A stretch of 63,393 nt of DNA, counting the filler, from Octopus bimaculoides (taxonomy: Eukaryota): the NCBI RefSeq assembly GCF_001194135.2. It is 5 parts of 4 records of this genome, joined end to end, with 100 filler letters (N's around TTAATTAATTAA, not from the genome) between each part and the next. Parts side by side here need not be neighbours in the genome. Positions count along the whole stretch, not along the records: positions 13,228 to 30,163 come from NC_068989.1; 4 more parts are not named here. One strand, given 5' to 3'. A program made the position numbers and the translations under genes. The stretch's first letter is position 1; every line of letters starts with the position of its first letter. Below, in pieces: positions 15,923-16,495 of this stretch. The notes under the pieces were generated by a model, which was given only the letters and a program-made list of their open reading frames with translations, was not told the origin of the DNA and ran no database searches.

Positions 15923-16495
15923 ATGGCACCAAAGTGGGAGAAGAAAGAATTAAATCTTCTGTTGCGAGCATGGATGATTGCTAGTGGCGATCCGCCAAAC
16001 AACATCATCACTGCTGCACTGAAAAACAATGGCTTTCACAGAACCACTGATCAGATGGAGCGGAAGAAGAATGAATTCCTCCAATCCTATACGCTCATCA
16101 GACCACACATTGACACCCTGGATGTCATAATCAAAAACTATTGTGGAAAGGCTGATAAGGATGGAGAAGATGAAAAGGAAACAACACCTGGAAGTCTCTT
16201 TGATCCAGAGGTTCCTCAAAAGAATGGATTACTCACCCCTGTGAATGACCAGGCAGAAAAGGATAGTGGAGCCAAGGAAGCAGCAACTAGAAGCCCCTCT
16301 GTACCAGTGGTCCTACAAAAGAAAGGAGCCCTCACCCCATTGGACAACCAGAGGAAAAAAGTTCTCACCACAAGAAAAGGAAGGATGGAACACAAACACA
16401 AGCATAAAGGAGGAAAAGGAAAAGGCAAAAATGAAACAATCAATTCGAAACCCCAATTCACCAAACAAAAAACAGAAAACCCCATGCTGGCATAG
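15923..16495 (+). CDS. intronless 190-aa ORF with N-terminal Myb/SANT-like (trihelix, Myb_DNA-bind_4-like) domain, nested in a spectrin intron
   Basis: KWEKKELNLLLRAW...IITAALKNNGFHRTTDQMERKKNEFLQSY fits the W-x3-E-x2-LL-x2-W ... GFxRTxxQ-x3-K-x6-Y pattern. Strong Kozak context (aagATGG), in-frame upstream stop at 15911, basic C-terminus, no stops or frameshifts. Confidence 0.6.
   Translation: MAPKWEKKELNLLLRAWMIASGDPPNNIITAALKNNGFHRTTDQMERKKNEFLQSYTLIRPHIDTLDVIIKNYCGKADKDGEDEKETTPGSLFDPEVPQKNGLLTPVNDQAEKDSGAKEAATRSPSVPVVLQKKGALTPLDNQRKKVLTTRKGRMEHKHKHKGGKGKGKNETINSKPQFTKQKTENPMLA

What the first reader, a model, noticed from the sequence alone, without database searches (positions are those of the whole stretch)
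15923..16495. Intact intronless Myb/SANT-like gene nested inside a betaH-spectrin intron
Seen: a 190-codon ORF without stops in a region where every other TE-derived ORF is broken. It has a strong Kozak ATG, an in-frame stop 12 nt upstream (so it is not a simple in-frame spectrin exon), a W..E..LL..W / GFHRTTDQ..K..Y helix-turn-helix signature and a Lys/His-rich basic tail. It also carries an internal duplication (QKNGLLTPVNDQ / QKKGALTPLDNQ) bearing TP sites. It lies behind a ~500-bp polypyrimidine tract and has an ATTAAA at 16603. Known: Myb/SANT-like proteins are typically the second ORF of PIF/Harbinger transposons and have been domesticated repeatedly (for example NAIF1 and the MSANTD genes). 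Inference: this is a domesticated or retroposed lineage-specific nuclear regulator transcribed from within a cytoskeletal gene. No Harbinger TIRs or transposase are recognisable nearby.
Basis: partly seen in the sequence, partly recalled or inferred. Interest (0 to 1): 0.75.

Follow-up and report, generated by a model that had tools for sequence, protein, structure and literature searches.

The report
Truncated LINE retrotransposon ORF1 fragment
The "intact Myb/SANT-like gene" is the first 1.1 kb (leader plus the front two-thirds of ORF1) of a multi-copy octopus LINE retrotransposon lying upstream of a spectrin-type exon, so it is an ordinary transposon relic and not a domesticated gene.

Summary
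The ORF and the pyrimidine-rich tract before it together form one repeat unit, window 15372-16486. That unit matches, at 71-81% DNA identity, the 5' part of a ~5.3 kb element found on at least 11 Octopus vulgaris chromosomes.

In all six related loci examined, the homologous ORF is followed directly by an ORF2 encoding an APE-type endonuclease and a reverse transcriptase. Copies end in a (TA)n tail and are mostly 5'-truncated. The element is therefore a LINE and the finding is its ORF1.

Full-length ORF1 (~318 aa) continues into a CCCH-like zinc finger and a conserved C-terminal motif. The window copy breaks off at 16486 and runs into a stop 3 codons later in unrelated flank. No other LINE part is present in the piece.

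The N-terminal domain is plausibly Myb/SANT-like. The window ORF itself is far below Pfam's cutoff, but 10 of 20 relatives pick Myb_DNA-bind_4, one passes the cutoff, and the predicted fold has three helices.

Low dN/dS (0.07-0.22) reflects selection on ORF1 in the LINE lineage, not domestication of this copy. The only mildly novel point is that this ORF1 domain combination is absent from the published ORF1 classification.

The parts
15372..15922 (+). Fragment of the LINE 5' leader (5'UTR). It is 84% C+T and contains short internal tandem duplications at 15445-15594 and 15770-15843.
   Evidence: blastn to five O. vulgaris loci aligns this tract contiguously with the ORF. The same CT-rich leader precedes ORF1 in a divergent subfamily (L006 7407-7964). 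Tandem repeats are and composition. No homology was found upstream of 15372, even at word size 7.
15923..16486 (+). LINE ORF1, codons 1-188. It is truncated and lacks the CCCH-like zinc finger and the C-terminal motif of the ~318-aa full-length protein.
   Evidence: The codon alignment shows collinearity up to ...GAAAACCCCATG (16486), after which the window diverges from all copies. tblastn with full-length members finds nothing beyond 16486 in the piece.
15935..16159 (+). Myb/SANT-like three-helix domain of ORF1 (residues ~5-79). The AlphaFold model has helices at residues 7-20, 25-35 and 42-79.
   Evidence: Pfam Myb_DNA-bind_4 scores are sub-threshold for the window, recurrent in 10/20 relatives, and above cutoff in P0037. 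The AlphaFold2 model has pLDDT 84.4. dN/dS is 0.07-0.22 among copies.
16217..16351 (+). Linker carrying the duplicated motif: QKNGLLTPVNDQ at 16217-16252 and QKKGALTPLDNQ at 16316-16351.
   Evidence: Coordinates are. The second copy is a subfamily feature shared at DNA level with L004 and seen in P0010, P0011 and P0017, and it is deleted in the main O. vulgaris subfamily. The linker evolves with dN/dS 0.5-0.9.
16487..16495 (+). Non-LINE flank that supplies the last two codons (Leu, Ala) and the TAG stop. The breakpoint lies between 16486 and 16487.
   Evidence: There is no similarity to any part of the LINE from 16487 to 19000.
19154..19417 (+). Host-gene exon encoding the start of a beta-spectrin-type PH domain. 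This is context and not part of the element. A possible next exon lies at 19698-19784.
   Evidence: PF15410 (PH_9) is precomputed on homologs. tblastn mapping of P0040-P0052 is.

Best explanation
Window 15372-16486 is a dead, doubly truncated copy of a two-ORF, APE-type non-LTR retrotransposon (LINE) that is abundant in octopus genomes. It holds ~550 bp of the element's pyrimidine-rich 5' leader and the first 188 codons of ORF1. It lies in the sense orientation about 2.7 kb upstream of a PH-domain exon of a beta-spectrin-like gene, presumably in an intron.

In the intact element, ORF1 encodes a ~318-aa protein with these parts in order:
- a Myb/SANT-like three-helix domain;
- an acidic/TP-rich linker;
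- a basic stretch;
- a CCCH-like zinc finger;
- a conserved C-terminal motif.

By analogy with other LINE ORF1 proteins, I infer that it binds the element's RNA (and possibly DNA) in the retrotransposition particle. ORF2 encodes the endonuclease and reverse transcriptase.

The window copy lost everything 3' of ORF1 codon 188. I infer a deletion, an atypical (endonuclease-independent or aborted) insertion, or an assembly join. The frame then closes by chance after two flank-encoded codons, giving a 190-codon ORF that looks intact.

Shown: homology, multi-copy status, the ORF1-ORF2 linkage in relatives, and truncation in the window. Inferred: the biochemical role of ORF1p, how the 3' part was lost, and that this copy has no function.
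For: 1. Multi-copy and dispersed. There are at least 12 annotated O. vulgaris 'hypothetical proteins' on 11 different chromosome-size contigs, one O. sinensis protein, and many Logan/ENA fragments, making 35 clusters at 50% identity.

2. The shared DNA unit includes the CT-rich tract and the ORF.

3. Paralog loci share a ~4.5-5.3 kb unit at 84-94% identity. Downstream of the ORF lie ORFs matching Exo_endo_phos_2 (E = 4e-12) and RVT_1 (E = 2e-31). The RT matches solved LINE-1 ORF2p (E = 1.5e-15) and R2 proteins.

4. A divergent subfamily (48% aa identity, L006) has the same layout: leader, ORF1, EN, RT.

5. Copies end at a common 3' end followed by (TA)n. Most are 5'-truncated, and at least 10 copies or fragments occur in 156 kb of fetched O. 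vulgaris sequence.

6. Full-length ORF1 members carry CKFxxxGxCWHGxxGxxCRFAHP and SFLxMAxRIVxQLTWLH, which the window lacks. No remnant of these or of ORF2 is present in 13228-30163.

7. Low dN/dS (0.07-0.22) holds among all copies, including obviously broken ones. Some 'private' window substitutions (Q54, D64, V68) recur in the independent fragment P0021. The constraint therefore belongs to the LINE lineage.
Against: - LINE copies are normally truncated at the 5' end, not the 3' end. This copy has no 3' end, no tail and no ORF2, so a secondary event has to be assumed and was not observed.
- The copy has no frameshift or stop over 188 codons.
- Its own branch shows an excess of synonymous changes (12 syn: 10 non, p = 3.5e-4 against neutral). 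That could also arise from host-level selection after insertion.
- I could not obtain sibling copies from the same genome or the orthologous intron from another species, so the age of the insertion and its post-insertion evolution are unknown.
- The source species was not identified.
- The LINE clade was not determined by phylogeny.
Confidence: 0.88

Rival explanations
1. Domesticated or exapted ORF1 fragment. The truncated copy is transcribed from the LINE leader's own internal promoter inside the host intron. Its 190-aa product (Myb/SANT-like domain plus basic tail, without zinc finger) is retained by the host, for example as a trans-acting inhibitor of this LINE family or as a nucleic-acid-binding regulator.
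For: - The frame is open across all 188 LINE codons, with a good start context.
- There is an excess of synonymous change on the window branch.
- The N-terminal domain is intact.
- The fragment retains ~550 bp of leader that could carry the internal promoter (inference).
- There is precedent that truncated L1 ORF1 proteins suppress L1 retrotransposition in trans (PMC5605252, found).
Against: - The same constraint signal is seen between copies that are clearly dead and is explained by selection on active master elements.
- Several window-specific residues recur in other copies.
- The stop codon is supplied accidentally by flank.
- The protein is not in the protein collection as a called gene.
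- No orthology or expression data are available.
- Open N-terminal stretches of 125-180 codons are common among decayed copies.
Confidence: 0.05
2. One reading: a domesticated or retroposed PIF/Harbinger-type Myb/SANT-like gene (like NAIF1 or the MSANTD genes) nested in a spectrin intron.
For: There is weak Myb_DNA-bind_4 similarity. The ORF has no introns. No TIRs or DDE transposase are nearby.
Against: - The family is physically linked to an endonuclease/RT ORF2 in 6 of 6 loci, across subfamilies. It is not linked to a DDE transposase.
- It is multi-copy on many chromosomes.
- The upstream pyrimidine tract is part of the repeat.
- There is no poly(A) tract or other mark of a processed retrocopy at 16487 onwards.
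Confidence: 0.02
3. Assembly artefact: the junction at 16486/16487 is a chimeric join made by a short-read assembler inside a repeated LINE. The real locus would then hold a longer LINE copy, or none.
For: The piece is a gapped scaffold with an N run at 27580-28283. LINEs of this family are abundant and 70-94% similar to each other, which is a typical cause of misjoins. A 3' truncation is otherwise unusual for a LINE.
Against: Nothing in the sequence marks a join. Both flanks are unique AT-rich sequence and the break is 11 kb from the gap. The conclusion 'LINE ORF1 fragment' holds either way.
Confidence: 0.05

Closest known systems
APE-type two-ORF LINEs of the CR1-like / Jockey superfamily kind
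   Same: - ORF2 has an N-terminal APE-type endonuclease and an RVT_1 reverse transcriptase.
- The 3' end carries a short microsatellite tail, (TA)n, instead of poly(A).
- Copies are mostly 5'-truncated.
- RT motifs (QHGFRPGRSCLTQL, YLDFAKAFDKVDH, YADD) and the C-terminal LYSLERRRERY motif resemble CR1-type elements. This last point rests on my own recollection and was not tested.
   Different: Clade assignment was not tested by RT phylogeny. ORF1 has none of the domains catalogued for this superfamily (RRM, CCHC knuckle, PHD, esterase, coiled coil; PMC4120745). The long pyrimidine-rich leader is unusual.
LINE ORF1 proteins, types I-V (Khazina & Weichenrieder scheme as summarised in PMC4120745)
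   Same: It is the first ORF of a LINE, it is basic, and it has a putative nucleic-acid-binding zinc finger. It evolves under purifying selection in its structured domain and quickly in its linker.
   Different: The domain set is a Myb/SANT-like three-helix domain plus one CCCH-like finger (C-x7-C-x8-C-x3-H). There is no RRM, CCHC, PHD or esterase. It would fall into 'type V, unclassified'. Neither 'Myb' nor 'CCCH' occurs in PMC4120745 or PMC13343379.
Pfam PF13837 Myb_DNA-bind_4 (Myb/SANT-like, trihelix/MADF-like) and the Myb-like second ORF of PIF/Harbinger transposons (NAIF1, MSANTD relatives)
   Same: It shares the W-x3-E-x3-LL-x2-W first helix and a G[FY]xR[ST]xxQxxxKxxxLxxxY-like third helix. 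Three helices are predicted, and the profile similarity is weak but recurrent.
   Different: It is encoded by a LINE and not a DNA transposon. The window protein is far below the family cutoff (12-15 against 27 bits). It has no partner DDE transposase. It is not single-copy or syntenic, as a domesticated gene would be.
N-terminal zinc-finger plus Myb DNA-binding motifs of R2-type LINE proteins (established knowledge; R2 papers listed)
   Same: It is a LINE-encoded protein that combines a Myb-type helix bundle with a zinc finger, which in R2 positions the element on nucleic acid.
   Different: In R2 the motifs sit at the N-terminus of the single ORF of a restriction-like-endonuclease element, and the fingers are CCHH. 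Here the motifs form a separate ORF1 of an APE-type element and the finger is CCCH-like. No sequence homology to R2 was tested.
Truncated L1 ORF1 loci and HAL1 ('half-L1') elements
   Same: These are genomic copies that retain only the 5' leader and an ORF1-coding part. Truncated L1 ORF1p can act in trans (PMC5605252).
   Different: From my own knowledge, HAL1 elements keep a LINE 3' end directly after ORF1. Here no LINE 3' end follows, so this is a broken copy and not an ORF1-only non-autonomous family.

Membership tests
Non-LTR retrotransposon (LINE), APE-type, two ORFs | Dispersed multi-copy homologs in the genome | tested here: met
   There are at least 12 annotated O. vulgaris proteins on 11 chromosome-size contigs, one from O. 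sinensis, and 35 clusters at 50% identity. At least 10 copies or fragments occur in 156 kb of fetched loci. Copy number in the window's own genome could not be measured.
Non-LTR retrotransposon (LINE), APE-type, two ORFs | ORF encoding an APE endonuclease and a reverse transcriptase, in the same unit and orientation | tested here: met
   This holds in relatives: Exo_endo_phos_2 E = 4e-12 to 6.5e-13 and RVT_1 E = 2e-31, in 6 of 6 loci including the divergent L006. It is absent from the window itself, so the window holds only a fragment.
Non-LTR retrotransposon (LINE), APE-type, two ORFs | Common 3' end with a simple-repeat or poly(A) tail, and 5'-truncated copies | tested here: met
   Relatives end in ...GAGCTGAAACTAGAAA followed by (TA)n or (ATAC)n, and their truncated copies start at reference positions 334, 582, ~2030, ~2250, 3774 and 4153. 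The window copy lacks the 3' end.
Non-LTR retrotransposon (LINE), APE-type, two ORFs | Target-site duplication flanking the copy | not tested
   None is expected for a copy that has lost its 3' end. Flanks of the full-length copies were not analysed for TSDs.
CR1-like clade (Jockey superfamily) | RT-domain phylogenetic placement among reference clades | not testable with these tools
   No reference LINE RT set was available. The only support is motif resemblance from memory and the microsatellite tail.
Pfam PF13837 Myb_DNA-bind_4 (Myb/SANT-like) | Score at or above the gathering threshold (27 bits) | tested here: not met
   The window ORF scores 12.3 bits (E = 0.23), or 14.6 bits for the trimmed domain. 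At family level, 10 of 20 members hit it at E <= 1, and P0037 scores 29.3 bits. P0037 matches the family profile built without it at 46 bits, E = 3.6e-7.
Pfam PF13837 Myb_DNA-bind_4 (Myb/SANT-like) | Three-helix Myb/SANT fold | tested here: inconclusive
   The AlphaFold2 model (pLDDT 84.4) has three helices. Foldseek against PDB gives no significant match (best E = 0.8). A MYB domain (6j5b, TMt 0.63) and a homeodomain (4uus, TMt 0.61) are among the weak hits. A PDB sequence-profile search gave nothing relevant.
PIF/Harbinger Myb-like ORF and its domesticated derivatives (NAIF1, MSANTD) | Association with a DDE (DDE_Tnp_4) transposase and TIRs, or for domesticated genes single-copy syntenic orthologs | tested here: not met
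   The neighbouring ORF is EN-RT and not a DDE transposase. The family is multi-copy. Synteny across species could not be tested.
Known LINE ORF1 types I-IV | Presence of an RRM, CCHC knuckle, L1-type coiled coil/CTD, PHD or esterase domain | tested here: not met
   A Pfam scan of full-length members (P0039, P0009, P0023, P0035, P0013) finds only sub-threshold zf-CCCH-type hits (best 18.6 against 20.5 bits) and none of those domains. RRMs in ORF1 proteins are known to be hard to detect by sequence, so absence is not proven.
HAL1-like ORF1-only non-autonomous LINE | LINE 3' end joined directly after ORF1 | tested here: not met
   Window 16487-19000 shows no similarity to any part of the element at word size 7.

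The most novel reading that the evidence does not exclude
The truncated copy is not inert. It is transcribed from the retained LINE leader inside the spectrin-like gene and makes a 190-aa Myb/SANT-like protein lacking the zinc finger. The host keeps this protein, for instance as a dominant-negative inhibitor of this LINE family's particle assembly, by analogy with truncated L1 ORF1p. That would be an early stage of ORF1 domestication in a cephalopod.

A separate and more likely novelty concerns the whole LINE family and not this locus: its ORF1 (Myb/SANT-like + CCCH-like finger) would be an undescribed ORF1 type.
Probability: 0.05. Interest if true: 0.55.

Novelty: new member of a known kind. 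Interest (0 to 1): 0.2.

Why it matters
For this locus, the result matters mainly as a correction. An ORF that looks like a lineage-specific nuclear regulator is a transposon relic. Similar fragments are already annotated as 'hypothetical' or 'uncharacterized' proteins in O. vulgaris and O. sinensis, which inflates counts of cephalopod-specific genes.

The by-product is of modest interest to transposon biologists. An abundant octopus LINE carries an ORF1 built from a Myb/SANT-like domain and a CCCH-like zinc finger, behind a ~0.5 kb pyrimidine-rich leader. That combination is absent from the published ORF1 classification. It also shows that Myb/SANT-like domains in animal genomes need not come from Harbinger transposons.

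Tried and rejected
- **Direct Pfam and PDB sequence searches with the window ORF.** These gave only sub-threshold hits.
- **PDB profile search with the domain alignment.** It returned only chance-level hits, such as ribosomal protein S8 at E ~0.1.
- **Foldseek of the domain model.** Nothing significant was found.
- **Remainder of the element in the window.** blastn at word sizes 11 and 7, and tblastn with ORF1 C-termini and ORF2, found nothing. This rejects a copy split by an insertion and a HAL1-like ORF1-only element.
- **Identifying the source species and host gene.** Searching with the PH-domain exon gave no named octopus protein. The best hit was an unnamed genomic contig (91% identity over the 99-aa exon query; 85.5% over the full 173-aa P0040 mapped back to the piece). 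Orthologous-intron and presence/absence tests were therefore impossible.
- **The published octopus brain LINE RTE-2_OV.** It is a single-ORF RTE element and not this family (PMC9115989).
- **dN/dS as a test of domestication.** I rejected it because the same constraint is seen among clearly dead copies.
- **tRNA-derived SINE check of the piece.** No tRNA-like genes were found.
- **(TA)n next to 15372 as a true insertion junction.** I did not rely on this, because the homologous position in L004 is an internal TA/T-rich stretch of the leader.

Full report
**1. Observation**

All the listed details hold:
- An in-frame TAA lies 12 nt upstream, at 15911-15913.
- The start context is AAG ATG G.
- The W5..E9..LL..W17 pattern and GFHRTTDQ (res 37-44) are present.
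- The duplicated motif QKNGLLTPVNDQ / QKKGALTPLDNQ is at res 99-110 and 132-143, with 7/12 identical residues.
- The tail is rich in Lys, Arg and His.
- The 551 bases upstream are 84% C+T.
- A lone ATTAAA lies at 16603. That is not notable in a 34% G+C region.

The ORF is coding-derived and not a chance frame. It matches octopus proteins at E = 7e-61.

**2. What the ORF belongs to**

A search of 5.8 billion proteins returned five Octopus vulgaris 'hypothetical' proteins, each on a different chromosome-size contig, at 62-77% identity. An exhaustive phmmer search of 1.84 billion cluster representatives found 35 clusters. Among those looked up were further O. vulgaris proteins, one O. sinensis RefSeq protein, and unnamed Logan and ENA contigs.

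The N-terminal ~110 residues are highly conserved and the rest diverges. Longer members (P0039 at 318 aa, P0009, P0023, P0035, P0013) continue beyond the point where the window ORF ends. They run into a CKFxxxGxCWHGxxGxxCRFAHP motif, a CCCH-like zinc finger with sub-threshold zf-CCCH hits (best 18.6 against 20.5 bits). Most of them also continue into a conserved SFLxMAxRIVxQLTWLH motif.

I fetched the DNA around five O. vulgaris paralogs. blastn shows that the similarity to the window is not confined to the ORF. It runs from 15372-15477 through the whole pyrimidine tract to 16486. The 'polypyrimidine tract' and the ORF are one repeat unit.

Compared with each other, the paralog loci share a much longer unit of 4.5-5.3 kb at 84-94% identity. 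Downstream of the ORF this unit carries long ORFs that match:
- Exo_endo_phos_2 and Exo_endo_phos (E = 4e-12);
- RVT_1 (E = 2e-31);
- solved LINE-1 ORF2p (E = 1.5e-15) and R2 proteins.

A sixth locus from a divergent subfamily (P0035, 48% aa identity) has the same order: CT-rich leader, ORF1, endonuclease, RT.

Copies end at a common 3' end...GAGCTGAAACTAGAAA, followed by (TA)n or (ATAC)n. Most extra copies in the fetched loci are 5'-truncated and reach that 3' end. At least ten copies or fragments lie in 156 kb.

This is the anatomy of an APE-type, two-ORF non-LTR retrotransposon. The finding's protein family is its ORF1.

**3. State of the window copy**

The longest copy (L003 24384-29646, 5263 bp) has a leader of ~1262 bp, an ORF1 of ~955 bp, an ORF2 of ~3.1 kb, and a tail. 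By interpolating, I estimate that the window fragment corresponds to about positions 710-1830 of that copy.

The codon alignment is collinear and frame-preserving up to ...GAAAACCCCATG (16486). After that the window departs from all copies. Two flank-encoded codons (Leu, Ala) and a TAG close the frame.

Sensitive blastn (word 7) and tblastn find no further leader upstream of 15372. They find no ORF1 C-terminus, no ORF2 and no 3' end anywhere in 13228-30163; the best tblastn E-value is 0.45.

The 'intact gene' is therefore an ORF1 lacking its zinc finger and C-terminal motif. A 3' truncation is atypical for LINEs and needs a secondary deletion, an aberrant insertion or an assembly misjoin. I could not tell which.

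**4. Is the N-terminal domain Myb/SANT-like?**

- The window ORF alone scores 12.3 bits against Myb_DNA-bind_4 (cutoff 27), or 14.6 bits for the trimmed domain.
- Across a 20-member domain alignment, 10 members pick Myb_DNA-bind_4 at E <= 1. No other family is hit by more than one member.
- One distant member, P0037, passes the cutoff at 29.3 bits. A family profile built without it still scores it at 46 bits, E = 3.6e-7 for a 1.84-billion-protein library. The link is therefore not circular.
- AlphaFold2 on the alignment gives a confident (pLDDT 84.4) three-helix domain with a long third helix.
- Foldseek against PDB gives no significant match. A MYB domain and a homeodomain appear only among weak hits.

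I conclude that the domain is plausibly a remote Myb/SANT-like domain. Membership is not demonstrated for the window protein itself.

**5. Selection**

In codons 1-85, dN/dS between the window and the O. vulgaris copies is 0.07-0.22, with dS of 0.4-1.3. In the linker it is 0.5-0.9.

Polarised changes give 12 synonymous and 10 non-synonymous substitutions on the window branch (p = 3.5e-4 against neutrality). The branch of the frameshifted copy L004 has 1 and 8.

This shows that ORF1's N-terminal domain is under purifying selection in the active LINE lineage from which the window copy descends. It does not show selection after insertion, for two reasons. The signal is general among copies, and several 'private' residues (Q54, D64, V68) recur in an independent fragment, P0021. 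The open frame is consistent with a fairly young insertion. Host-level retention cannot be excluded without orthologs.

**6. Context**

A PH-domain exon (PF15410 on homologs) lies at ~19154-19417 on the same strand, with a possible next exon at 19698-19784. From my own knowledge, its sequence resembles the C-terminal PH domain of beta-spectrins. I did not locate the upstream exons.

No named octopus protein matched this exon, so the source species remains unidentified.

**7. Comparison with what is known**

The locus is an ordinary LINE relic.
- It is not the RTE-2_OV element described in the octopus brain, which has a single ORF (PMC9115989).
- By motif resemblance, which I recall and did not test, and by its microsatellite tail, the element looks CR1-like.
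- Its ORF1 has none of the domains of the published ORF1 types I-IV (RRM/CCHC, coiled coil/RRM/CTD, PHD, esterase) and would be filed as type V, 'unclassified' (PMC4120745).
- Neither that survey nor a 2026 CR1 survey mentions Myb or CCCH domains. My literature searches found no paper linking Myb/SANT-like domains to LINE ORF1.

The unusual ORF1 architecture is a modest novelty of the LINE family and not of this locus.

**8. Verdict**

Its core claim, a domesticated or retroposed gene, is not supported.
- The best explanation is a truncated LINE 5' leader plus ORF1 fragment (confidence ~0.88).
- The residual novel reading, an exapted or trans-acting truncated ORF1p by analogy with PMC5605252, has a probability of ~0.05.
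- Interest is low (0.2).

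Noticed in passing
L003 25646-26600; L002 10001-10957; L006 8001-8789; proteins P0039, P0009, P0023: The LINE family's full-length ORF1 combines a Myb/SANT-like three-helix domain, an acidic/TP linker, a basic stretch, a CCCH-like finger (C-x7-C-x8-C-x3-H) and a conserved C-terminal SFLxMAxRIVxQLTWLH motif. 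This combination is not in the published ORF1 type scheme (PMC4120745) and may be an undescribed ORF1 type.
   Followed up: partly
L001 ~9330-9420 and 13900-14050; L003 24384-24398 and ~29610-29646; L005 8562-8616 and ~11590-11670; window 15343-15371: Copies of the LINE end in (TA)n, and several are also preceded by (TA)n whatever their 5' truncation point. That could mean the element targets TA microsatellites. In the window, the TA-rich stretch next to 15372 may instead be internal leader sequence.
   Followed up: partly
window 15372-15922; L006 7407-7964; L003 ~25100-25640: A ~0.5 kb leader that is over 80% pyrimidine directly upstream of ORF1 is kept across LINE subfamilies that differ by about half of their ORF1 residues. 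This suggests the composition itself matters (promoter, translation control or DNA/RNA structure). In sense orientation inside an intron, followed by AG at 15921-15922, it could also act as a cryptic 3' splice site.
   Followed up: no
window 22573-22846, 26795-27032, 28370-28553, 28892-29089: Short dispersed repeats (120-230 bp) are shared with the O. vulgaris loci at 72-94% identity, in both orientations and often several per locus. They are probably SINE-like or other small TE families. ARAGORN finds no tRNA-like gene in the piece.
   Followed up: partly
window 29921-30153: A degenerate tandem array with a 20-bp period nested in an 82-bp period (63-68% matches) runs to the end of the piece. 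Both strands are open there in several frames only because of the repeat.
   Followed up: no
window 27580-28283: An assembly gap (run of N) shows the piece is a gapped scaffold. Junctions inside repeats, such as 16486/16487, should therefore be treated with some caution.
   Followed up: no
window 19154-19417 and 19698-19784: PH-domain exons of a beta-spectrin-like host gene lie on the + strand. No named octopus protein matched, and the best match was an unnamed genomic contig (P0040: 91% over the 99-aa exon query, 85.5% over its full 173 aa). The source may therefore be an octopod without annotation in the protein collection.
   Followed up: partly
proteins P0001-P0005, P0007, P0009, P0010, P0013, P0035, P0039, P0053 (O. 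vulgaris GCA_951406725.2); P0006 (O. sinensis XP_036366487.1): Fragments of this LINE's ORF1 are annotated as 'hypothetical predicted protein' or 'uncharacterized protein LOC118766810' in public octopus gene sets. Some models splice in upstream exons (P0003) or read through frameshifts (P0002). This is transposon contamination of the gene catalogues.
   Followed up: partly
L002 13001-13831 and 15542-17247; L004 15259-19812; L006 11967-14987: Additional partial copies of the same or a related LINE lie within a few kb downstream of the primary copies, in tandem or nested. This points to local clustering of insertions.
   Followed up: no
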